Shown here piece after piece: positions 33,533-46,291 of a stretch of 64,000 nucleotides of DNA. The notes below the pieces were generated by a model, which worked only from the letters and a program-made list of their open reading frames with translations, was not told the DNA's origin and made no database searches. Source of the stretch: Mytilus edulis (lineage: Eukaryota); NCBI RefSeq assembly GCF_963676685.1, contig NC_092355.1, positions 43,772,001-43,836,000 on the forward strand, written 5' to 3'. Position numbers and translations under genes: made by a program. The first letter of the stretch is position 1, and every line of letters begins with the position of its first letter.

Positions 33533-34173
33533 TTATTTGGGAATGTGACCAGATCTAACATATTTCATAAGTCTGACCGCTTCAACATGCATGAAATTGA
33601 AATCCTTTCTCAAAATTTCTTCATTCAATTCCTGTAGAACAGCACTGTCGACTAGTTGGTCTGCGAATTCCTTACAATATTTTGACAGGTGAAGTTTTTT
33701 AAGAATACCAAGTGTCTCCTGGACAGATTTCCCATCGACAACAGACTTGGATGATCCAGCTGACGAGCTACTTGTGGATGAGCAATAATCACTGTCAGAC
33801 GCACATGTTTCTCTGATATACATATAATTGTCAGATGATTCTAAATTCACACTTTCGTCTGCATGCATCACACGATAGTTCTGATCCTCTACAACTACAC
33901 TTAATGAATCATACGGCCGCGCTGGTAATGGGGGTCTTTTTTCTGCGGAATATATTGGAGGTCTAGATGGTAACCACTCAGGATCTGGTTCGGGTAAGAC
34001 TTCATAAATGTCGTCTTGTTCATCCCTTACACTTTTACATTTTTGTCTAGGAATTAGCTTTGGTGGTACATCATTGTAGTCATTGCCATGAATGTAATCA
34101 CTTGGAAGTAAATCTGGAGGTACAGCATTTCCTGTTCCCGTAGTTTTCGCACCTCTTTCAAATTTGGTAAGTT
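33533..34173 (-). CDS. Last exon: Pro-rich/Tyr motifs and C-terminal SAM domain
   Basis: PKLIPR, RPPLPARP, DDIYEVL, NYRVM, DNYMYI; SVQETLGILKKLHLSKYCKEFADQLVDSAVLQELNEEILRKDFNFMHVEAVRLMKY is a SAM-type pattern. Confidence 0.85.
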
Positions 34174-37100
34174 CTGCAAAAAAAATGTGTTTTTTTTTCT
34201 TCTTTTTAAATGTAATCTTTAACACACAATTCACTTGTTGTATCATGAATTCATATATACTTGACAGTTTGAACATTTATGGTGTATTACCAATTTTCAA
34301 GGGCAACTAATACATGTAGAAAGTTGAAGAATTGAAAAATCTCCTTTAGTACTTTCGTGATAGTATTTTTTTTTTTTGTGTCGTTCTGAAAATATCAGTC
34401 ATTTCGAACTTCAAGCAGACATTATTTCAGAATATAGCGAAGAAATTATATATAATAGCTTGTATGTTTTTATTCTTTTATGTGAATGTATATACATGTA
34501 TTTTTTAAAATGCCGCCGTACATGCTCGTGCCTCTCTATTTCAGAATCCGTGTCATTGGTGTCATTTGTTACATATCTTTCTTGTTTTGAGTCTTGAAGT
34601 TCTTGTGAAGCCAAGAATTGTTGGCTGGTCTTTGATAGTCCTGCATAATGTATTCAATAATTTAGAGCTTACAAACTATAGCGATACCTATCCATTGTTG
34701 GTAAACCGAATTTTGACATCCATATATCTGTTTGTTGGGTTGGGTTGATACCTCATTGTTCTAAATCTTGCAACCCTTTTTTTTATTAATTTTGCATGAT
34801 ACCAAATAAATTTATTAATTAAACATTTTATGATATCGAAATCCATAACTGTAGATAAATATCGTTCCTACTAAGTATATTAAACCAATCTAATACATGT
34901 TTACCTGGACTACCTTCGTTATCCTGAAATTTGATATTCTTCTGTACAAAAAGCTCCATTGATCTCAGCTTAGCCTGGAACATTTCCTGAGATTTATGTG
35001 TATATCCAGTAATAATAGATACCGATATATCTGGACATAGAGCCACCAGTGCTGATACCGGTGATATTACACCTGTAATGGAAAAAGATCTAATATAAGT
35101 AATTTAAATACCTGCAATGGAAAACGTGCTGATATATGTGATTTTACACCTGCAAAGGAAAAAAGTACTGATATAACTGACACTACAAATGAAATGAAAA
35201 ATGTGTAAGTTTAATAAGTTTTTTTTTAAATTAGTGTTATTTTCACATGTGTGATGAATAAAGGCAACAGCAGTATACCGCTGTTCGAAATTCATAAATG
35301 GATTGAGAAAAACACGAATCCGGGTTACAAACTAAAACTGAGGGAAACGCATCAAATATAAGAGGAGAACTACGAAACAACGGAAACACAACATTACACG
35401 GTAACACACACACAGAAACGAACTATAATATAACAATGGTCATTTTCCTGACTTGGTACAGGACATTTTAAGAAAACAAATGGTGGGTTGAACCTGTTAT
35501 TGTGGAATGCCAAACCGCCCGCTTTAATCAAATCAAATATTTTATTGTCGTAGAAACTTTACAGTTTGTGACCAACATATATTAACGCAATAAACATATA
35601 TACATACATATCAAACATACACAATAAAAACAACATCAAAATTTATAACAACAAACAAGCTGTTAAGAGTCCCCTGACATCAGTTTTAATGAATTTTTCA
35701 AGAAGGATCCTAACTTGTGTGTTTGTAAAGGAGTTGATGGATTTAATAGCAATGTTAGATATAACATTAAAATGACAACATTACATTTTTATATTTATTT
35801 ACTTTACTGAGCTGGTTGAAGATACGCGCAAAGATATCAATTGTAATTTTGATGGCATATGTGACTAAGTGATTTTTTAATTTTGTCGAGTCTGCGACGA
35901 AAGTCGTAAAAAAGTGAAATGGCGAAACTATATTCCGTCGGTTTCAGTGTCGGTGTCAGCATATGAGTTCATTCTGTTGAAAAATGTAAGCCATTAACAA
36001 GTTTGTCAAACCTTCATGGAGTTTCATGAAACTTTTACATTGTCCCGTATCTTACGGCTAAATGGGATATTTGTAGTTCATAGTATTGCTACGATACAGT
36101 CAAACAGTAATAACTTGAAAAAATTATCAATTTCAAGTTGTTTTACGAACATTGGACTGATGTTTCTTTATTATCAACAAAAACGTAACAATCCCGCAAA
36201 AATAAACAGGTCATAAAAATAGGACTCTATTTTTAGGTTGGATTATTTATTATACCCCCGCTTTGAAAAAAGGGGGGTATACTATTTAACCTCTGTCTGT
36301 CCTTCCGTCAGTCCGTCAGTCCATCAGTCCATCAGTCCGTCAGTCCGTCAGTCTGTCAGTCAGTCCGTCCGTCCCATGAATATTTTTCGTTACATTTTTC
36401 TCAGGAACTACACTACCAGGATTTCTGAAATTTGGTTTCAGGCTTGATATAAGTCAGCTATACTGTGTGATGCGTTTTCAGATTCATCACTCGACAACTT
36501 CCTGTTTACCAGACACTTGTATCATGTTTACACCTGATAGCCAAGTTGAAAATTTTTCGTCACATTTTTCTCAGGAACTGCACTACCAGGATTTCTGATA
36601 TTTGGTTTCAGACTTGATATAAGCTAGCTATACCGTGTGATGCGTTTTCAGATTCATCAATCAACAACTTCCTGTTTACCGAACACTACTATCATTTTAC
36701 ACATGATGGCCAAGTTGAAAATTTTTGTCGCATTTTTCTCAGGAACTACAATGCCAGGATTTCTGAAATTTGGTTTCAGGGTTTATATAAGTCAGCTATA
36801 CTGTGTGATGCCTTTTCAGATTCATCACTCGGCAACTTCCTGTTTACCGAACACTTACATATTTTTACCCTATTAACATTATCCACTTGCGGCGGGGGTA
36901 TCATCAGTGAGCAGTAGCTAACAGTTACACCTGTTGAATTTATTTACTTGTCGATCAATATAAGTAAAAAAATAGATGTGGTATGACAGACAATAAGACA
37001 ATACTTTGCAAGAGACCAACTGACACAGAAATTAGCAAATATAGGTCCCCGTACGGCCTACTACAATGAGCAAAGCCGATATCGCATGTATACTTTTAAC

Positions 37101-40100
37101 AATGTTAAATGAATATTATTTATGAAATCATCCCTTCTTAAATTTTACGGACGCCAGCACGAGTTGGTTGACCGTTATGGGATAACCGTTTCACAGATAA
37201 TATCGGATATGTTTTTTACGGCGTTACTACAAACCCCTTCCATTTCATTATATGACTTACCGAATTAGACTTTTTACCGGATTTGTAACAACATCAGCAG
37301 CACGCCGGGTGCCACATGTGGAGCAGAATCTGCTTACCCTTCCGAAACATCTGAGATTACCCCAGTTCTTGGTGGGGTTCGTGTTGCTTATTCTTTAGTT
37401 TTATAAGTCGTGTCATGTGTACTATTGTTTGTCTGTTTGTCTTTTTCATTTTTAGCCATGGCGTTGAAAGTTTATTTTTATTTATGAGTTTGACTGTCCC
37501 TCTATTATCTTTCGTCCCTCTTTTATGGTTTCTGAAACTTAACACAATGGAATAATAGGACTGTTACTAAATAAAAATTAAAAATCAATTACGAGAACGT
37601 TAAAGTTTCAAGAAATATATGAGCTAACATGCCTCCCCAAAAATATGATTACAGTTAGTAAAGAGATTAGTACGAAAATACTGCCTACCTTCTATTTTTA
37701 TATATACCAAGTCGACGAAAAGCCAAAAAATATATTACAAAGAGCCATAAAAAGCAATATAATTAAAGTAAAATACACAGGTCGTGCACAAATATTAAGA
37801 TTGTTGCTATCATTGCATATCTTATGTGTGCCAATAACAGTTATGACCAAATAATAACTTCGAATGAATGGTTGTTGCTGCTATAAATTCCCCTTTTCGT
37901 ATGCGTTTTTGTACATTGCAAAAATGCATGATTCAATAATGGTTTCTGCTACTTGTTGCATTCGCAAGTCAGAACTATCTTTGTGAACGGTGTTTCGATT
38001 TTTCAACCAATAAATTTAATCTTAGCTTTAAAGTAAGCAATGTTTAAGAAGTTAATAATTACCATCTTCTAAGCAGTTCCCTTGTATGTTATCTTCTACG
38101 TAAGTCTTCATGATTAGTATATTGACTCCTTTAATACTTTCCAGAGTAGATCTTAGTTCTATGTTGTAGCTTGCGTATCTTACTTGGACTGGCAAATTAT
38201 TTTCTGCTAATATTTCTTCCATAAGTTGGGGGTTTCCCACTAAGAAGACATATTTAATTTATTAAATTTTGTTTAAAGGAATAGCCCATGTATTTCATTT
38301 TTTCCAAACTATCAGAAAAGTCTTAAGTGTTCACCTTAGTTTTACGTGTTTTATAAAATGATGACATTCAGCTGGATTGTTTTAGAAACCAAATATGGAT
38401 GTTTTGTGCTTTTTATGTTTAAACTGTACTTTCACTAAAAGAATGTGAAGTTGAAAAATCTTAAGATTATTCCAAATAGTTTCCACTAATATACATACTG
38501 TCTTCAATCAGTAACTCAGCTATTGTTGTTTGTGATATTGGTGTTGATAGAACATATTTTATTATTCTGTAATTCTCTCGCGATTCAGGGTTATCTCGAG
38601 TGGCTATATCAGAACAGTTATGTATTGCTCAATCGGCGTGATGACATATTAACATTTACTTTTATTGTATTGTTTAGTTTTATTGCCATCTCATTGAATT
38701 CTTTGAATTCTGCGATTACTGATTTTACTTTAATGCATTTGTTTATGGTGTCAGAGAAGATACTGCATTCTGGTAATTCTTGCAGTATTCATTGGTGATG
38801 TAATGCAGTTACACGCTCCACCACCATTGAATAATTTTCTTTTTACAGACAATGGAAAACTACCTTTCTTCGAACTTTTCACAACAGAGAACTTATATTT
38901 TCCATCAACAGGTATACTGAGGAACTCGTCTCTTTGATTTCCATCATCCGTTGATAGTCTGGCTAGAGCTCTAAGCTGCTGGCATGTTCGATGGAGACGA
39001 ATTATCTAAAGAAAAAAATCATTTAAATTGTATCAATTTAAAGGATCTATTCCAATGATCAAAGGATTCCACCTTGTTATAACATTGTGTGTAGTTTATT
39101 TTATTTTATTTTGTTTCGTTTTTTGTATGTGTTTGGGTAAATGTCTTTGTAATACGTTTTCGTTGGTTTTATTTTGAATTACATTTACTTTATTAACTTC
39201 TGTTTCCAAGTTCTACTTATTGTTTAAATGTTTTAATCGACATATTTCTCTTCCTACTGTCATGAACATTTGGATATTGTTCTATTAAAATTTGCTGTTA
39301 CAAAGTTTTTTAGATTATCAAACTTAGGGAATATCTCCCTAATGCACAGCTCTGATTCCTTCCCTTCTCTTGCTAAACTTCTTTTTTTTTTCTAAGGTTT
39401 CGGTTTTCAAAAGTTTAGCCCTGAGCATCACTGGAGAAGCATTTTTTGTCGACATGTGCATTGTTGCAGTAAAAGGGGTACTTTTAATTTTGTAACTACA
39501 AATTAGTGTAAAGAGTTCATAAAAACTTGTATTCATTGTACAATTTACTGTCTATCGAAACTGATATAACTTAAACAAAATGTCGACAGATAGAATCACT
39601 TTTATATAAATATCAATGGAAAATTTTAGTTAGGTTTACAATCGTTAAACCCGTTTCATCTATAAAAAAAAAGAAGATGAAAACAACACGTTATACACAT
39701 TGCATGCATTCAAACTTGGTTTTTTTTCTCTCCATTATTTACTTTCATCAGGAGCACTCAAAGCCAAATATTTAAAAGCCAGTTATAAGATTCAATGGTA
39801 CTTGTGGTACATCAGAAGGCATAGTCTGTTATATCATATTTGTTGAAGCTTGAAGACAAATCTATTTAATTAAGTGATGCTGTTAATCGTTTTCATCTAA
39901 TGTTTCTTGTAACAGTTATCATTTTGATGCCATGTGGTGTAAATATAAATGAGATGTTGGGTATGCGTCAAAGAGACGGCAATCCAACGACAAAATAACC
40001 AAAATTTCTCAGAATCTTACAGTATTGTTATATAGATCTAACTGTTTGTAAAAGGGAAGAGATGAAATTCCAAGGACAATAAATATTGAAGGCAAATAAA

Positions 40101-43100
40101 ACGCAACATTATGTAGCGTATGATTAATTAGAAACAATATTTACAAGCACCAAAGCACTAAAGTAAAACATCATGTATGGTTTATAAATCTTAAACAACA
40201 AGCGTAAATTTCCATTAAGTTAATAGAGATTTAAAGCTTATTAGTATGCAACTAAACCTCTTACGGGAGGAATTGTACTTGATTTTCATATGATGAAGAC
40301 ATAATCTTTCTATCAGTTGAATTGGGGTCTGGAGCTGCTAGCAGTCCTTTATTAAAGAGGGTACAGATAATAGAGGGACAGTCAAACTCATATATCGCAA
40401 ATCAACTGACGGATGTTAATGTGTGTATCATTGTCATTTTGCTTAGTTGTTTTGTTCTTTTTATGTTATCTATTCTGACATTGGACCGGATTTCTTTTCA
40501 ACAGAGTGTTACTGTGTGTATTGCTATGTTTTTCTTTATTCTATATTGGCTAGAGGTATAGGGCGTGAGTTAGATTGGACTACCTATTTCAATTTGTCTT
40601 TAAATATAGAATGAAGTTTTTACAGCCCGATAATTATATTAACTTACGGAAAACGTTCGACAATATATGAAAACTAAATAAATCAAAACAACTTTTTTGA
40701 TTATATGCGAAATACAACATTAAAATGTTTACTTACTAATACTTATGGTCAAACATTAAGATACGGTATATGCCCTTTATATAGTCTAAGTTTTACCTGA
40801 TCTTTAGCATAATCGTCATACTTTGTCTCCCCATTGAATCCCTTTGTCAAGATCACTAGAAGTGGTAGGTTGCCCTTGTACCTTCTGTGGAATTCGGGTA
40901 ATGATAATTGTTTTTCTTTAGAATACTCATACGCACAAGGCTTTGACGCAGTAGCTTAAAAAAATGAAAAATCCATATGAAGCAATCGGAAATTAAGACT
41001 GAAAAAAGATATTTGTTCTGAAATATTTTTTATCAACAGATTCTGACAAATTTCGCGCATCTATGATATTATAAGTCGAAAGTCATACAAAATCAATGCT
41101 CGAAGTTCAAAATTTGATTTAAAACATGTAAAACACAGGTTGATCTTTAACGTTAAAGATGAGTTAATAACAGACCAAATACCATTGTTGCTAATCTGAA
41201 AGCCCGTAGCATGTCCTGGCCATTCCAAATAGTTTTGGGATATTCATCATGGGAATATTTTATTACGTACGTTAACGTTGTTAATCTATTTGCAAAAAAA
41301 AAAAATTCTTCTCCCTTTATTTATCAAATAAGCAATTGGCACTTCCTTCATCTAATGTTATCATGTAAACGGTTAAATAGAAGTTAACTTGTAAACAGGC
41401 GCTTATATCCCAAACGTCCGTTCCAGTCAATACTTGGATATAATACAATAAAACAGCCTGTCCTCAAGATCTAAAAGACAGTATGACTGTTACAGCTTAT
41501 TCTCCGATTGGGACAGTCTGTCACTACTAGACAGTGCAGCCTGGTACAACTTGTCCTTCGAGTGTAACAGTCTGTTACTACCAGACATTGCGGACTGGTA
41601 CAACTTTTACTCAGAGTGGGACACCCTGTCACTGCCAGACAGTGCGGTATGGTACAGCCTGTCCTCCCAGTGGGACAGTCTGCTATGTCAATCCTGATCA
41701 ACTTGTACGTTCACTTTGTAGCCAGTACAAAGTGTCCTCTCTATATTAAAGCGCTTCTAGCACTTAATATATCCGACGTACGCTCTGTTGCTTGATGACA
41801 GCTCATCGACAGCCAACTGACAGCCTTGAATGCCGTTTTTCGTTCTCTCATATACCCGTGGTCGATTTCATTATTCCCTTGATAGGGGTTTTCTCTAAAT
41901 GTTCCCGATACCGAACACAAGAAATCCCTCTCGAAAACCCCCATACCCTTGGACTCAACCACCGCCTTTCCCGCCAAACGTCTAAATCAAATCAACGCTT
42001 CTTCCTGCGTGAATTATGTATTGCTACAACAAGATTCTTCTTGTTTGAAACCATAAAGACCAATAATCATTTCAGTAGCTAGGTCAATAAAAGAATGTGT
42101 TGTATTTTTGCAAAACTAAACAACAAATTTAATAACCCATATATTACATTCAAACACAAAAAACTAAAAGTTTTACAAAATGTTTAAAAAAATTTAAAAG
42201 TTCTGAAATAATTCTTATTAAATTAGAACTTAAATTTGAAACTGGATATTTTATATAAGAAAACAATTATTTTCATGAAGTGTGAATGAGGACGTATAAT
42301 GCTTTAACACTGACCTGGTGGATAATTTACCAGCATAATTGCAAACGATATCACAAAGAAAAGTGTGTCTTATCTATGTATAAAAAGTTTAGATTACTAA
42401 AACAAAGCTTGGTTATAAACATGGTGTCCACAAATGTGCATAATGTAATTGTATTCTGCCTACAAAGAATTATTGGAGAAAGCAATAATTTTTTTTTCTT
42501 CTGAAAGACTTATTCTTAATGGTAATCTTTGATAATGTATCAACTGTATATTGCCAAGCTTTGTATTATTAATCCAAACTTTGACGCTTAGTACAGCGTG
42601 TTAGTGAATTGCTCTTCTTAATTGTTATTCAATTATATATGACTTAAATTTCGAAATAAACACACTACCTGGACATGGCATGAACACTTGTATAAATGAA
42701 CCTTGTTTTCTGGCTAGCCGAACCTCCCGGTTATATAGCAATGTTAAAAACACATACATTGGCTTCTCGTGCGTCTTTAAAGTTTTCTTATTTTTTAATT
42801 ACATATTTGAATTTGTTTTATAAAATTAATTTATATTAACCATAGAATGTAATTCATGATGATTTCTAGAAGTTCTTATTTACAAATATAGCAATCTACG
42901 AAATTAAAACGCATATATAATATAAGATAAAAACATGATAAAACGTCGATTTATAACAGCTATGTTTTTGATATATAAATTAAAACTAAACGTACCAAGA
43001 TCAATTCCAGGTTCAACAATGGCATCTGTTTCGTGTTTTTCAGTTAAATGCTTTCCATTAACTATCGTTACAATTGTTTCAATAAATTGATTCATTCCTT

Positions 43101-46100
43101 CTTGAAAATTTTCCTCAGAGGTCATTGTTTCTTTTTTCAACCGAAAATAAACAGCCAATGCGTGGTGATCCAGGTGTTGTTCTTCTTCGCACATATCATT
43201 TTCAGAATCACTGTCTGTTGCAATGTCACATAATTCATCTGAAAACAGAGCCCGTGCTAGTATTGATTTTTGTCTCATCCTAAGTATCAATCTGCCGACA
43301 ATTTAATTTGAAAAAAAAAATCATTTGAAGATAACCATGATGACGTTGATAGTGTTAGGCTTTTCAAAAAATTTTCAAAGATTTAAATTCTCTTCATATT
43401 TGTACTTGTTTGGCTTCATAACTTTTTTGATCTGAGCGTCACTGACGAGTCTTATGAAGACGAAACGCGCGTCTGGCGTATTAAATTATAATCCTGGTAC
43501 CTTTGATAACTTATTAAATAGAGATGTTTTCAAACGTAGATACATGTACTCAAATAACAACATAATCTAATAGTGAATTGTAGTTTACTGATGTTAATAT
43601 CTCGTAAGTTGATTGGAAAGATAACAATCAGGGTAACAAAAGAAGACATAGGGGAATAAACACGTAACGTGTCAACCGGGTGCGGGAATTTCTCGCTACA
43701 TTGAAGACCTGTTGGTGACCCTCTGCTGTTGTTTTTTATTTGGTCGGGTTGTTGTCTCTTTGACACATTCCCCATTTCCATTCTCAATTTTATTGTTTCT
43801 GTTAGATAAGGATACAAAGAGACAAATGACAAGATTATTAATAGCTTATTTTATTTTTGCAACATTGATTGGTCGTAATTCTTACCATTTGGTTGTGTTA
43901 TTATAACGTGGATGCTTTCATCGGGACCAAAGTCTATAAGCTCTGCAATTCGATCCATAAACGTGCCTATCTCTATTAAAAAGGACGAATCATTTTCCAA
44001 CAATGACTTTTTGACTTCGACGTATAAAAGTAAACTTCCCTCTGTTGCTCTATCAAAAACAAATTTAAGTTGACCCTTGTTTATTTCGTCTTTGAAATCG
44101 TTCAGTAGTTTTGCTTTCTCTACAGCAACTTGATCTAGAATCTCGGGAAAGATTAAAACAAATGGACTAGTATCGCCATCATCTAGGATAACAAATATAT
44201 AAAACAACGTATTCATTAAAAATATATTTTATACTGATATATACATTCAATACAGTGTATCGATGAAAATTATAATCTTTTTCAAGGCAAAAATCATTAT
44301 CGTTAGTTAGACATACAAGTACTGCTTCTTTTTGTATGATATTGTAATTCTAACGCCTATAACATGTATGACGAAACATTTATTTAAATAAAAAAATAAC
44401 AATTTGCATTGAAAGCATATAAAACAATATAACAGTATAATTTGCAATATAAAATTGCGATATAATTTTCCCTGATGCATGGTTTTAGTTGACATTTAGA
44501 TCTTAAAGAACGACTCTTTTCCAGGGAATTATAATTTTAAACACTCAATTTAAACATACCAATATTCTCCATTTGAATGCGATAATACGAAAAAATTTCA
44601 GCTGCTAGTATTTGGCTAATAACAATCTAGACAAATATCAATAATAATTATGCAGCAAAGCTTATGGGGCTATGTAGCTATTTGTTTGTTTGATTGGCTA
44701 ATCATTTATCTACTAGTATATTATGGTATCATATGAACTTTGTATACTCACTAGTTAATGATATTTGCTGTTTTATGTATGCTGTCAGTCCCTTTTTATA
44801 ATATACTGTTACCTTTTTATCGTGCTGGTGAACTAGAAAAGTTGTACCTGGTAAAAGGATCATATTGTTACATGGTATACGTTTACTTAAGTATAATACT
44901 TTGTGCACTTCATTAATAGGGTGTGCTCCTTACACAAGTACTGCTCTTATTCAGCTAAGAGACAGCTGGAATCGAGGTTATGGGATACGTGTATGACATG
45001 AAAAACTTTCCCAGTCATAGCACCCGATCTCGTTTCTAAGAAATTCAGGCGATTACACGGTATTTCAGGTTTCTTTTCTGTCCACAATGTAAAATTGAGA
45101 ATTGAAATGGGGAATGTGTCAAAGAGACAACAACCCGACCATAGAGCAGACAACAGCATGTATCTTCTGAATGAATTTATACATCATTAAAATACTGTTA
45201 ACTCGAATCCAAATGTCTTTCGCATTGTTTTTGTTTTAATGAGTGTTCGGTTATTTTGATTTTCCCATTTGATTAGGGCCTTTCCTTTTTAAATTTTCAG
45301 CTCAGTATTTCTGTGATTTTTTGTACAGCACATGCCACTAGATTTATTGTTAAAAATTGTTTTAACCAAGTATAATAGTTAAAATCGAGAATTCACCACA
45401 TATTTTCAAAACTAAAAAAAAAAACAATCTATACGTGAACGGAATAAAACCTGTATTTCGTCTTTGATCTTAAATCCATAATTGAATGTTGATGACTTGA
45501 ACGGGAATATAATATTACTTTTATAAAATGATAAAGAGGGAAAAAAGGGGATTTCCGAAATATATTGGTCGAAACATAAAAAAACAGAAAACGCCATGGC
45601 AAATATAACTGGAATGTTCAATATGAACAGAGAAACAATTCCAACAAACACTTCGAAGAAAATAATGATTGAGTAATACAAAAAAGATTTTATTTCATCA
45701 AATATTACCTTCTTGGTTTTCTACAACCGATTTAGCCTCTAATGCTTCTCTAGTCCTGTTTTCGTCAATGGTGCAAGTTCGGAAATTCTCTATTTTCTTT
45801 TCGAATGACGATTCTAGAGTCTTATTTAAGTATTGATCAATTCGTTTTGCAACTTCAGTAAATTCTTTAAAGAAATCAGACATTATTGTTTCGGTTATAT
45901 TGATAGATAATCCATGTAAATATCTATTCCTGGCTCTACGAATTCTTTCAACATCATCACCAATCTCAACCTCTGTGGGGGTAGGGTTTGAACCCCAATT
46001 TCTTGTTGGTTTCGTAACAAATGTGTTCCTAAAATGCTTTACAATTATATATGCTAGTGAAACATCCAACACTTTGAAACCTTTGTCTGGGTCTGCTAAT

Positions 46101-46291
46101 TTGTTAACGACTTGCCATTCCTCTGGGGATAGTTTTTTATTAAAGTCCTTTGTTTGAACAATTCTGTCGTACAATGATTTGGGAGGCATCTGTGCATGTG
46201 CAATGATATCTTGAAGCATCTCTGACAGTATATCAGCCAACACTATACTTATTCGACCATGTCGTGCTTGTTCCGGTGTCGCAGTAGCCAT
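33533..46291 (-). CDS. HEPN(DZIP3-type)-2x unnamed module-CABIT-Pro/Tyr-rich-SAM protein (about 802 aa), GAREM/THEMIS-like adaptor with N-terminal HEPN
   Basis: Eight phase-compatible GT-AG coding exons: 46291-45709, 44182-43886, 43238-42996, 40954-40797, 39005-38864, 38239-38063, 35072-34905, 34173-33533 (2409 nt, 803 codons, no internal stop). A 5' UTR acceptor lies at 46342-46341. Confidence 0.72.
34905..40954 (-). CDS. CABIT-domain exons (40954-40797, 39005-38864, 38239-38063, 35072-34905)
   Basis: LSLPEFHRRYKGNLPLLVILTKGF..DQ|IIRLHR..FLSIPVDGKYKF..LMEEILAENNLPVQVRY: two LP-x-V subrepeats and SIP..YKF, as in CABIT domains. Confidence 0.75.
36250..36935 (+). mobile_element. HINE/DINE-1-like element with GTCC/GTCA microsatellite and about three 169-bp internal tandem repeats
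   Basis: 5' TATACCCCCGC..GGGGGGTATA, microsatellite 36295-36375, repeat anchor tcaggaact at 36401/36571/36739, 3' GCGGGGGTAT plus short hairpin. Confidence 0.8.
37138..37525 (+). mobile_element. 3' end of a Naiad-like PLE (RT C-terminus and 3' UTR)
   Basis: LKFYGRQHELVDRYGITVSQIISDM followed by a UTR also seen at about 16970-17205 and 32130-32225. Confidence 0.55.
41510..41683. repeat. 54-bp tandem repeat (about 3.2 units)
   Basis: Units start at 41510, 41564, 41618 and 41672 (gggacagtctgtcactaccagacagtgc..ggtacaac..agt). Confidence 0.8.
43436..43479 (+). ncRNA. Minimal type I hammerhead ribozyme (retrozyme repeat)
   Basis: gcgtca CTGACGA gtctt atg aagac GAAA cgcgcg TC tggcgt; all core bases and stems intact. 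Confidence 0.85.
45709..46291 (-). CDS. DZIP3-type HEPN domain exon
   Basis: LDVSLAYIIVKH..PTRNWGSNP..IGDDVERIRRARNRYLHG is the HEPN_DZIP3-like pattern with Rx4H (RNRYLH). Confidence 0.85.

What the first reader, a model, noticed from the sequence alone, without database searches (positions are those of the whole stretch)
33533..46291. Putative HEPN ribonuclease fused to a GAREM/THEMIS-like CABIT-PRD-SAM signalling adaptor
Seen in the sequence: eight exons splice in frame into one ORF of about 802 aa, with a DZIP3-type HEPN retaining RNRYLH, then CABIT, SH3-ligand motifs (PPLPAR = PxxPxR; PKLIPR = PxxxPR), Tyr motifs (YEVL, YRVM, YMYI) and SAM. Established: CABIT + Pro-rich + SAM is the GAREM architecture (Grb2/SHP2-linked adaptor), and HEPN RNases (RNase L/Ire1 KEN, Cas13, Csm6) form a composite active site from two HEPN units. 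Inference: SAM oligomerisation or recruitment to phosphotyrosine receptors could dimerise and switch on the HEPN, giving a receptor-triggered, RNase L-like effector in a mollusc. I know of no described HEPN-CABIT fusion, but could not search for one.
Basis: partly seen in the sequence, partly recalled or inferred. Interest (0 to 1): 0.9.

Follow-up and report, generated by a model that had tools for sequence, protein, structure and literature searches.

The report
Mussel HEPN fused to GAREM-like adaptor
This blue-mussel gene really does join a predicted RNA-cutting HEPN domain to a GAREM-like signalling adaptor ending in a SAM domain; the combination is undescribed in the literature, but it belongs to a known, very shuffle-prone family of bivalve immune-type HEPN proteins.

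Summary
On the minus strand, eight canonical GT/AG exons (46291-33533) read in frame into 802 codons, and a ninth, optional 96-nt cassette exon lies at 44847-44752. The genome is Mytilus edulis.

- **Gene models.** M. coruscus CAC5385892.1 (800 aa) and M. galloprovincialis XP_076082924.1 (836 aa) are colinear with all exons.
- **Evidence for fusion.** Five HEPN-less paralogues on the same chromosome carry their own ATG in the exon-4 equivalent. Here that ATG is gone, yet exons 4-8 are under purifying selection (dN/dS 0.24). So this half most likely needs the upstream exons to be translated.
- **Domains.** HEPN_DZIP3 is supported, with an intact Rx4H motif (RNRYLH). SAM is supported, and its nearest solved relative is the GAREM1 SAM. 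CABIT is only partly supported: there is no Pfam hit, and profile-profile and language-model evidence covers the first ~100 residues. Exons 2-3 encode ferredoxin-like, probably TRADD-N-like modules typical of bivalve HEPN proteins.
- **Not tested.** No RNA data could be reached, and the proposed RNase-switch mechanism remains inference.

This is a new architecture within a known class.

The parts
45709..46291 (-). Exon 1: start codon and the DZIP3/hRUL138-type HEPN domain (194 codons plus 1 nt). The Rx4H motif RNRYLH lies at 45931-45914 (R121, N122, H126).
   Evidence: Pfam PF18738 at 27.1 bits, E 4e-6. phmmer finds 432 relatives, and 50 of the 52 long ones carry HEPN_DZIP3 with E down to 1e-43. 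In a 73-sequence alignment, R121 is kept in 67, N122 in 66 and H126 in 63. Identity to the Mytilus coruscus and M. galloprovincialis fused proteins is 92-93%.
44752..44847 (-). Optional cassette exon E1b: 96 nt, phase 1 to 1, 32 codons. Acceptor ttttaccag, donor GTGAGT.
   Evidence: It is present in M. galloprovincialis RefSeq XP_076082924.1 (P0174 residues ~196-228), with 29 of 32 residues identical to the window reading. It is absent from the M. coruscus model.
43886..44182 (-). Exon 2: one complete ferredoxin-like (beta-alpha-beta-beta-alpha-beta) module, probably TRADD-N-like. 297 nt, phase 1 to 1.
   Evidence: The AlphaFold2 model has pLDDT 93.9 and pTM 0.85. PDB searches give only generic ferredoxin-like matches. 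The same module follows HEPN in 34 family proteins. ESM Atlas places it near TRADD-like_N clusters and near a mollusc cluster in which 56% of members carry HEPN_DZIP3 and 26% TRADD-like_N. Pfam TRADD-like_N itself does not hit it.
42996..43238 (-). Exon 3: an acidic stretch followed by a half-copy of the exon-2 module. 243 nt, phase 1 to 1. Its donor at 42996 joins to exon 4.
   Evidence: The exon-2 family HMM hits it at E 0.0015, and its own family HMM at E 2.8e-12. It is 100% identical to P0167 residues 15-94, which continue directly into exon 4.
40797..40954 (-). Exon 4: the start of the GAREM-like adaptor half. It is the ancestral first coding exon, but its ATG has been lost here. An in-frame TAA lies directly upstream of the acceptor, and exons 4-5 contain no Met.
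   Evidence: All five HEPN-less paralogues carry an ATG 6-8 codons before the conserved Y-x-Y motif. Paralogue A reads CTACCATGATGTCA where the window reads CTACTGCGTCA.
38864..39005 (-). Exon 5: the CABIT-like domain, part 2.
   Evidence: It is conserved and colinear in five paralogous loci. BLASTP to a Pfam-CABIT ORF of the same genome (L014) gives E 6.7e-4.
38063..38239 (-). Exon 6: the CABIT-like domain, part 3.
   Evidence: 97% identical to paralogue A and conserved in four of the five paralogous loci (A, B, C, D). 100% identical to P0167.
34905..35072 (-). Exon 7: the end of the N-terminal domain of the adaptor half. The database models use the donor at 34905; a second in-phase donor lies at 34914.
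   Evidence: Conserved in paralogues A, B and C. P0167 and P0173 carry the extra GSP that the 34905 donor produces.
33533..34173 (-). Exon 8: the Pro/Tyr-rich linker (PKLIPR, YEVL, PPLPAR, YRVM, YMYI) and the C-terminal SAM domain (about 33724-33536), followed by the TAA stop at 33535-33533.
   Evidence: Pfam SAM_1 scores 18.7 bits here and 25-31 bits in paralogues, above the cut-off. The best PDB relative is 2DKZ (LOC64762, which I take to be GAREM1), at E 0.0019 for the exon alone and 1.6e-4 with the family profile. The P-x-L-P motif and the Tyr of DDIYE are invariant or nearly so across the family.

Best explanation
This is one real Mytilus edulis gene, made by fusing two older genes.

The upstream part is exons 1-3, plus an optional cassette exon. 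It is the standard bivalve cassette: a DZIP3-type HEPN domain followed by one and a half ferredoxin-like (TRADD-N-like) modules. Each of exons E1b, 2 and 3 lies on a symmetric phase-1 exon.

The downstream part is exons 4-8. It is a member of a small Mytilus family of ~420-aa adaptor proteins. Each has a divergent CABIT-like N-domain, a Pro/Tyr-rich linker and a C-terminal GAREM-type SAM. The other family members start at their own ATG in the exon-4 equivalent.

Shown here:
- The exon-3 donor and the old 5'-UTR acceptor of exon 4 are both in phase 1, and annotated proteins join them.
- The fusion predates the split of M. coruscus from the M. edulis group.
- In the window the ancestral ATG has decayed while the coding sequence stays constrained. 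The adaptor half therefore most likely depends on the upstream exons for its start codon.

Inferred:
- The HEPN is a metal-independent RNase, or at least an RNA-binding effector, with an intact Rx4H site.
- The TRADD-N-like modules couple it to the adaptor half.
- The adaptor half takes the protein into SH3/SH2 (Grb2/SHP-type) signalling complexes, and SAM self-association raises the local HEPN concentration. Two HEPN domains could then form a composite site, as in RNase L or Ire1.

The most likely role is innate immune or stress signalling, as proposed for other bivalve HEPN expansions.
For: Gene model:
- Canonical splice sites and compatible phases throughout.
- RefSeq XP_071141972.1, on this chromosome, is 100% identical to E3-E8 and joins GIDL to ATASKP at 42996/40954.
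- CAC5385892.1 (800 aa, M. coruscus) and XP_076082924.1 (836 aa, M. galloprovincialis) are colinear with E1-E8.

Fusion rather than two genes:
- Paralogues A, B, C, D and F have E4-E8 equivalents in the same order (the E6 equivalent was not recovered in F, nor the E7 equivalent in D and F). None has a HEPN, E2 or E3 exon within the 3-20 kb of upstream sequence examined.
- Each paralogue has its own ATG in the exon-4 equivalent. The window has none, and a TAA sits directly before the acceptor.
- dN/dS between the window and paralogue A is 0.24 at dS 0.23 (p 1.6e-12). A rough estimate for the window branch alone is about 0.43 (p 7e-4).
- Colinear homology with paralogue A stops about 240 bp upstream of exon 4.
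- In the tree, the fused copies form a clade (support 81/81) next to the HEPN-less form.

Domains:
- HEPN.
- The E2 module.
- CABIT-like domain.
- SAM.

Literature context:
- DZIP3-type HEPN is expanded in bivalves as an N-terminal effector, with Rx4H the commonest motif (PMC9646362).
- Known fusion partners are listed in PMC3710099.
- HEPN together with TRADD-N occurs in lineage-specific expansions in bivalves and cnidarians (PMC8195603).
Against:
- The RefSeq model for this very locus starts at an ATG at 43278, inside 'intron 2', and omits the HEPN exons. A HEPN-less product may therefore be the main or only product here.
- The full-length models in the other two species could be predictor merges of adjacent, phase-compatible genes. 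The M. coruscus copy keeps a Met at exon 4.
- Several stand-alone family proteins end 20-40 residues after an E3-like module, and reading through the E3 donor here gives a stop after 30 codons.
- Pfam does not detect CABIT, and the AlphaFold model of the adaptor half failed (pLDDT 34).
- The HEPN Pfam score sits exactly at the cut-off.
- To my knowledge, RNase activity has never been shown for a DZIP3-type HEPN.
- The fused copies evolve 3-4 times faster than the HEPN-less form.
Confidence: 0.6

Rival explanations
1. There are two transcription units in M. edulis. A HEPN plus TRADD-N-like gene (E1-E3) either ends just after exon 3 or is decaying. A separate adaptor transcript starts inside intron 2 and yields the 522-aa RefSeq protein: half a module, the CABIT-like domain and SAM, with no HEPN. 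On this reading the HEPN-adaptor protein is at best a minor read-through isoform.
For: - XP_071141972.1 starts at the ATG at 43278 and lacks E1-E2.
- Family proteins P0020, P0036, P0132 and P0035 end 19-38 residues after an E3-like module. Read-through of the E3 donor reaches a stop after 30 codons.
- No database protein of 287-913 aa from this assembly contains E1 joined to E8.
Against: - Even this model joins the HEPN-cassette exon 3 to exon 4, so the two units are not independent.
- A start at the first ATG of the open frame that contains exon 3 is the usual sign of a 5'-truncated prediction.
- E1 is an intact ORF, 92-93% identical to the fused proteins of two other species, with the catalytic motif unchanged.
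- The E2-like module directly follows HEPN in 34 relatives, and CAG2253977.1 joins E2-E3-E4.
Confidence: 0.2
2. The fusion protein is real, but the HEPN is a non-catalytic RNA-binding or protein-binding module and the adaptor half is not a CABIT protein. The product would then be a scaffold of a fast-evolving, lineage-specific family, with no RNase-L-like switch.
For: - Pfam CABIT is not met, and the profile-profile match covers only ~100 residues.
- The HEPN score is at threshold.
- PMC3710099 notes that some animal HEPN domains are likely non-catalytic binders.
- The homodimer prediction gave no support either way (not evidence).
Against: - The Rx4H residues, and the invariant R116 upstream of them, are all kept in three species.
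- The top ESM-Atlas named clusters are all CABIT, at 0.90 with 188 shared features.
- The SAM is closest to the GAREM1 SAM.
Confidence: 0.15
3. The adaptor half in the window is a start-less pseudogene that happens to lie in frame behind a HEPN gene.
For: The ancestral ATG is lost, and amino-acid change is faster than in the HEPN-less paralogue.
Against: - 419 codons carry no stop or frameshift at dS 0.23.
- dN/dS is 0.24 overall and about 0.43 on the window branch, both significantly below 1.
- The same Met loss is seen in a second fused copy, which RefSeq annotates as an 836-aa protein.
Confidence: 0.05

Closest known systems
[quoted passage not shown]
   Same: Both have an N-terminal HEPN with an Rx4H motif and Asn after the Arg. 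Both belong to a large lineage-specific expansion, with at least 127 exon-level copies in this genome. Both are fused to varied C-terminal domains and are proposed to be immune effectors.
   Different: Published partners are NACHT, Death, CARD, LRR, TPR, Ank, RING and Zn-ribbon. Among 52 long relatives I also found nSTAND3, Ig, AIG1, IIGP and the RIG-I C-terminal domain. None had a CABIT-like domain or SAM, and no top-150 relative contains an E4-E8-like part.
HEPN plus TRADD-N lineage-specific expansions of bivalves and cnidarians (Kaur et al. 2021, PMC8195603)
   Same: Both have an effector (HEPN RNase) followed by small alpha/beta adaptor modules as a constant cassette, joined to variable partners. 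Both evolve fast and differ between close species.
   Different: The TRADD-N identity of exons 2-3 is only a lead: ESM features score 0.86, the fold is ferredoxin-like, and there is no Pfam hit. There is no Death or DED domain here, and the partner is a signalling adaptor rather than a sensor repeat or NTPase.
GAREM1/GAREM2 (single-CABIT, Grb2-binding adaptors with a C-terminal SAM)
   Same: The order of parts is the same: an N-terminal beta-rich domain, a disordered Pro/Tyr-rich region with PxxP motifs, and a SAM at the extreme C-terminus. The GAREM1 SAM (2DKZ) is the nearest solved relative.
   Different: The N-domain is not recognised by Pfam CABIT. Binding to Grb2 or SHP2 is untested. The mussel has better CABIT matches elsewhere, on chromosome 1, so this is a divergent side branch and not the GAREM orthologue. 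GAREM has no HEPN or TRADD-N-like part.
RNase L / Ire1 (KEN-type HEPN RNases switched on by dimerisation)
   Same: Both place a HEPN domain in one polypeptide with a signal-receiving part. A composite active site formed by two HEPN units is the established rule for this superfamily.
   Different: They belong to different HEPN families. There is no kinase or pseudokinase, no ankyrin or 2-5A sensor here. Dimerisation and RNase activity are untested.
SARM1 (a SAM-oligomerised enzymatic effector)
   Same: A SAM domain could assemble an effector domain into an oligomer. The SARM1 SAMs are the next-best solved relatives of this SAM.
   Different: SARM1 has tandem SAMs that form an octamer and a TIR NADase effector. 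Here there is a single SAM and a HEPN.

Membership tests
HEPN_DZIP3 (PF18738) | A profile match at or above Pfam's gathering score | tested here: met
   Exon 1 scores 27.1 bits against a cut-off of 27, E 4e-6, which is borderline. The orthologous full-length proteins score 18-22 bits. Membership is secured transitively: phmmer relatives of exon 1 score up to E 1e-43 on PF18738.
HEPN_DZIP3 (PF18738) | The Rx4-6H catalytic motif, usually with Asn after the Arg | tested here: met
   R121-N122-R-Y-L-H126 at 45931-45914. These columns are R in 67 of 73, N in 66 of 73 and H in 63 of 73 relatives. The motif is identical in the M. coruscus and M. galloprovincialis proteins.
HEPN_DZIP3 (PF18738) | RNase activity or RNA binding | not testable with these tools
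The homodimer prediction returned 'no answer'.
CABIT (PF12736) | A Pfam profile match | tested here: not met
   No hit on single exons. The own-genome scan with PF12736 finds 10 loci, all on chromosome 1 and none in the window. Full-length paralogues show SAM only; the best CABIT value is E 0.08, 12.8 bits, in P0169.
CABIT (PF12736) | Profile-profile or other remote homology to bona fide CABIT domains | tested here: inconclusive
   hhalign of the family N-domain against Pfam-positive mussel CABIT ORFs gives 76.8% probability and E 2e-5, covering residues 13-111 only. The global mode adds nothing. Exon 5 against a CABIT ORF gives E 6.7e-4. In ESM Atlas, 24 of 30 named hits are CABIT clusters, at 0.90 with 188 shared features.
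CABIT (PF12736) | The fold (two beta-sheets with an inserted SH3-like part) and the buried conserved Cys (PMC13381594) | tested here: inconclusive
   AlphaFold2 on a 12-sequence alignment failed, with mean pLDDT 34. A nearly invariant Cys (C59 in P0153 numbering) exists, but its equivalence to Themis Cys152 is not shown. The family profile does not hit Themis chains in the PDB.
SAM (PF00536/PF07647) | A profile match | tested here: met
   The window exon 8 scores 18.7 bits, below the cut-off of 23. The aligned paralogues score 25-31 bits, above the cut-off. The family profile against the PDB finds the GAREM1 SAM at E 1.6e-4, then the SARM1 SAMs.
GAREM-type adaptor | The order CABIT, Pro-rich region, C-terminal SAM, with Grb2/SHP2 binding through PxxP and phosphotyrosine | tested here: inconclusive
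   The order of parts and conserved PxxP and Tyr motifs are present. The CABIT identity is only partial, and binding cannot be tested here.
TRADD-N / TRADD-like_N (PF20694, PF13820) for exons 2-3 | A profile match | tested here: not met
   No Pfam hit on exons 2 or 3. The own-genome PF20694 scan does not hit the window. There is only E 0.061 in relative P0132, over its E2-like module.
TRADD-N / TRADD-like_N (PF20694, PF13820) for exons 2-3 | An alpha/beta ferredoxin- or ACT-like fold and a position next to an effector domain | tested here: inconclusive
   The confident model (pLDDT 93.9) has beta-alpha-beta-beta-alpha-beta topology. PDB searches give only generic ferredoxin-like matches, at Z 6.7 or less and Foldseek E 9e-3 or more. 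ESM Atlas gives TRADD-like_N clusters at 0.86 and a mollusc HEPN_DZIP3 plus TRADD-like_N cluster by structure.

The most novel reading that the evidence does not exclude
The protein is a working, signal-gated RNase. The GAREM-like half docks on Grb2/SHP-type partners downstream of tyrosine-kinase-linked receptors, and its SAM polymerises. The TRADD-N-like modules transmit this, so that two HEPN domains pair and cleave RNA. That would be an RNase-L-like effector arm wired directly to phosphotyrosine signalling in an invertebrate. It would also hint that CABIT adaptors had an ancestral link to immune effectors.
Probability: 0.15. Interest if true: 0.8.

Novelty: new variant of a known kind. Interest (0 to 1): 0.45.

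Why it matters
It adds a signalling adaptor of the Themis/GAREM type to the known fusion partners of the bivalve DZIP3-type HEPN effector. Until now those partners were mainly sensors, NTPases and death-fold domains. If the HEPN is active, the protein would link phosphotyrosine/Grb2-type signalling directly to RNA cleavage, which can be tested with simple constructs.

It is also a clean, datable example of gene fusion by exon shuffling on phase-1 exons. HEPN-less sister genes survive nearby, and the ancestral start codon is still present in one species but decayed in another.

The practical weight is modest. HEPN_DZIP3 is very promiscuous in bivalves, the CABIT call is not secure, and no function has been shown.

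Tried and rejected
- **RNA evidence.** No transcript test of any junction was possible.
- **Joined model.** All searches were exon by exon, by reference, or used database proteins that turned out to be colinear (P0167, P0173, P0174).
- **Pfam on single exons.** This gave no CABIT hit and no TRADD-N hit.
- **Own-genome family scans.** PF12736 and PF20694 did not hit the window.
- **Structure of the adaptor half.** AlphaFold2 of the HEPN-less paralogue P0153 with 12 sequences failed (pLDDT 34), so no fold search of the CABIT-like domain was made.
- **HEPN homodimer.** Complex prediction returned 'no answer' at score 0.01. This is no evidence either way.
- **Fold searches of the exon-2 model.** Both returned only generic ferredoxin-like folds. 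They neither confirm nor exclude TRADD-N.
- **Global hhalign.** It did not extend the CABIT match beyond ~100 residues.
- **Considered and rejected.** A start-less pseudogene, because of the dN/dS result. An unrelated plus-strand gene in the span, because only short chance ORFs and intronic tandem repeats are there.

Full report
**What is in the sequence.**

The gene lies on the minus strand. I read the exons directly from open frames, GT/AG sites and phases:

| Exon | Coordinates | Notes |
|---|---|---|
| E1 | 46291-45709 | ATG preceded by an in-frame TAA |
| E2 | 44182-43886 | |
| E3 | 43238-42996 | |
| E4 | 40954-40797 | |
| E5 | 39005-38864 | |
| E6 | 38239-38063 | |
| E7 | 35072-34905 | |
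| E8 | 34173-33536 | TAA at 33535-33533 |

No exon piece contains a stop, and the split codons are all sense codons. RNRYLH, PPLPAR, PKLIPR, YEVL, YRVM and YMYI are present. I worked exon by exon, or with database proteins that proved colinear.

**Which genome, and what others have annotated.**

The assembly is 1.37 Gb with 14 large contigs. An NCBI protein, XP_071141972.1 (P0167, 'uncharacterized protein [Mytilus edulis]', 522 aa), lies on a contig of exactly the length of the window's contig, 82,303,794 bp. It is 100% identical to E3, E4, E5, E6, E7 and E8 in that order.

That protein starts at an ATG at 43278, inside 'intron 2', and so lacks E1 and E2. Three other proteins are relevant:

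- CAC5385892.1 from M. coruscus (P0173, 800 aa) is colinear with all eight exons. Identities are E1 92%, E2 84%, E3 87%, E4 75%, E5 83%, E6 93%, E7 87% and E8 79%.
- RefSeq XP_076082924.1 from M. galloprovincialis (P0174, 836 aa) is also colinear, with E1 at 93%. It carries 32 extra codons between E1 and E2.
- CAG2253977.1 from an older M. edulis assembly (P0166, 535 aa) joins part of E2 to E3 and on to E4-E8.

The extra segment in P0174 is intact in the window as a 96-nt phase 1-1 exon at 44847-44752, with a good acceptor and a GTGAGT donor.

So the architecture has been predicted independently in three species. I could not see the evidence behind those models.

**Is it one gene or two?**

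Exons 4-8 have five paralogous loci on the same chromosome:

- A at 43.574-43.589 Mb, 76-97% identical.
- B at 43.599-43.605 Mb.
- C and D in tandem at 70.97-70.99 Mb.
- F at 23.45 Mb.

All five keep the exon equivalents that were found in the same order; the E6 equivalent was not recovered in F, nor the E7 equivalent in D and F. HMMs built from the HEPN and E2/E3 families find nothing within the 3-20 kb of upstream sequence examined at any of them.

In all five paralogues the exon-4 equivalent carries its own ATG, 6-8 codons before a conserved Y-x-Y motif. Paralogue A reads ...cag|CTACCATGATGTCA, and the matching RefSeq protein (P0175, 427 aa, four transcript accessions) starts MMSRPS. In the window the same acceptor is followed by CTACTGCGTCA. 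The ATG is gone, a TAA lies just before the acceptor, and neither exon 4 nor exon 5 has a Met.

Yet exons 4-8 show no stop or frameshift. Against paralogue A they give dS 0.23, dN 0.055 and dN/dS 0.24 (p 1.6e-12). Assigning 80% of the non-synonymous changes and half of the synonymous changes to the window branch still gives about 0.43 (p 7e-4). This allocation is an assumption: polarised replacements were 29 on the window branch, 12 on P0153, and 16 unpolarised.

A constrained coding sequence without its own start most likely needs an upstream coding exon. The only one supported is E3, which is in the right phase.

Other observations fit this reading:

- Colinear DNA homology with paralogue A ends about 240 bp upstream of exon 4.
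- The second fused copy (P0166/P0174) has also lost the Met (ATLSRP), while the M. coruscus copy keeps it (ATMSRPS).
- In a maximum-likelihood tree of the shared part, the four copies with upstream HEPN-cassette exons or a missing Met cluster together (81/81) beside the HEPN-less form. They sit inside a 99/99 clade and have 3-4 times longer branches.

The simplest history is a single fusion before the M. coruscus / M. edulis-group split, followed by decay of the now redundant ATG.

What remains open is whether E1-E2 are spliced to E3 in M. edulis. The evidence in favour:

- E2-like modules directly follow HEPN in 34 relatives.
- CAG2253977.1 joins E2-E3-E4.
- E1 is intact and is, with E6, the most conserved exon between species.

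The evidence against:

- RefSeq's own model for this locus lacks E1 and E2.
- Some relatives end shortly after an E3-like module.

**The domains.**

*HEPN.*
- Exon 1 hits PF18738 exactly at the gathering score (27.1 bits).
- It has 432 relatives at E ≤ 0.001 in a 1.8-billion-protein library. Of 52 long ones, 50 carry HEPN_DZIP3, with E down to 1e-43.
- R121, N122 and H126 (Rx4H) are the family's conserved residues.
- The genome holds at least 127 such exons.

This matches published descriptions: lineage-specific expansions in oysters, an N-terminal position, and Rx4H as the commonest motif (PMC3710099; PMC9646362).

*Exons 2-3.*
- Exon 2 folds confidently (pLDDT 93.9) into a beta-alpha-beta-beta-alpha-beta domain.
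- Exon 3 is an acidic stretch followed by a half-copy of that module.
- PDB searches give only generic ferredoxin-like matches, and Pfam TRADD-like_N does not hit.
- ESM-Atlas features and structure point to TRADD-like_N clusters, and to a 242-member mollusc cluster in which HEPN_DZIP3 and TRADD-like_N co-occur. One relative gives a weak TRADD-like_N hit over this module.
- HEPN with TRADD-N is a described theme in bivalve and cnidarian expansions (PMC8195603).

I call these modules 'probably TRADD-N-like'.

*CABIT.* This is the weak point.
- Pfam finds no CABIT in the exons, in an own-genome scan (10 hits, all on chromosome 1), or in full-length paralogues. The best value is E 0.08.
- Remote evidence exists but covers only the first ~100 residues. 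hhalign against the mussel's Pfam-positive CABIT ORFs gives 77% probability and E 2e-5. Exon 5 against one such ORF gives E 6.7e-4. The nearest ESM-Atlas named clusters are uniformly CABIT at 0.90.
- The AlphaFold model of the adaptor half failed, so the fold could not be compared with the new Themis CABIT structures (PMC13381594).

*SAM.*
- The window exon is below Pfam's cut-off, but aligned paralogues are above it.
- The nearest solved chain is 2DKZ, 'LOC64762'. From my own knowledge this is GAREM1/FAM59A. It scores E 0.0019 for the exon alone and 1.6e-4 with the family profile, followed by the SARM1 SAMs.
- The Pro-rich P-x-L-P motif and the Tyr of DDIYE are invariant or nearly so across the family.

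**How it probably works.**

Shown:
- A fused reading frame under constraint.
- An intact HEPN catalytic motif.
- A conserved module cassette.
- A GAREM-like layout of the C-terminal half.

Inferred from established knowledge of HEPN RNases (composite sites formed by two HEPN units in RNase L, Ire1 and Cas13) and of GAREM/Themis adaptors (Grb2 and SHP binding):
- The adaptor half localises the protein to SH3/SH2 signalling complexes.
- SAM self-association concentrates it.
- Two HEPN domains pair and act on RNA.

None of this was tested. The dimer prediction gave no verdict.

**Novelty.**

No paper in the searchable library mentions HEPN together with CABIT. Published partner lists for this HEPN family do not include CABIT or SAM. 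None of the 150 best HEPN relatives has an E4-E8-like part.

The fused proteins are, however, already in public databases as uncharacterized entries. The HEPN family is also notoriously promiscuous: 77 Pfam families occur among 52 relatives. I therefore rate this a new variant of a known kind, of moderate interest.

Noticed in passing
window 44752-44847 (-): An intact 96-nt phase 1-1 cassette exon lies between E1 and E2. Including it would give an 834-aa isoform.
   Followed up: partly
window 40954-40958 (-), compared with G000:C12:43574461 (paralogue A): The ancestral start codon of the adaptor gene has been lost in the window: ATGATG in paralogue A against ACTGCG here. It is also lost in the second fused copy, but retained in M. 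coruscus. This looks like start-codon decay after gene fusion.
   Followed up: yes
G000:C12 43.574-43.606 Mb, 70.97-70.99 Mb, 23.45-23.46 Mb: Five HEPN-less paralogues of exons 4-8 lie on the same chromosome. Two are 170-220 kb from the window and two are in tandem. Relatives in Pinctada and Tegillarca suggest the family is older than Mytilus.
   Followed up: partly
whole genome G000: There are at least 127 exon-level copies of the DZIP3-type HEPN domain, with dense clusters on C13 (about 4.8-12.7 Mb and 18.3-18.4 Mb) and C12 (65-82 Mb). The nearest paralogues of exon 1 are on C4 at 13.96 and 14.03 Mb, at only 46-48% identity.
   Followed up: no
P0166 / P0174 compared with the window: A second fused copy is 77-93% identical, depending on the exon. 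It is seen in an older M. edulis assembly and in M. galloprovincialis, but it has no counterpart in this assembly: exon 1 has only one hit above 50% identity. This is either presence/absence variation or a very divergent allele.
   Followed up: partly
window 35048-35180: A 39-bp tandem repeat (3.4 copies) runs into the exon-7 acceptor and repeats acceptor-like 'ccattgcag|gt' units upstream of the one in use.
   Followed up: no
window 36304-36855 and 41485-41682: Two intronic tandem arrays: an 8-bp array followed by a 170-bp x 2.8 array, and a 54-bp x 3.7 array. Both give spurious repetitive ORFs on both strands.
   Followed up: no
window 42904-42995 (-): If the exon-3 donor is not used, the frame runs 30 more codons to a TAA. 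That would give a ~405-aa HEPN-plus-modules protein, similar in length to stand-alone relatives such as P0020 (407 aa).
   Followed up: partly
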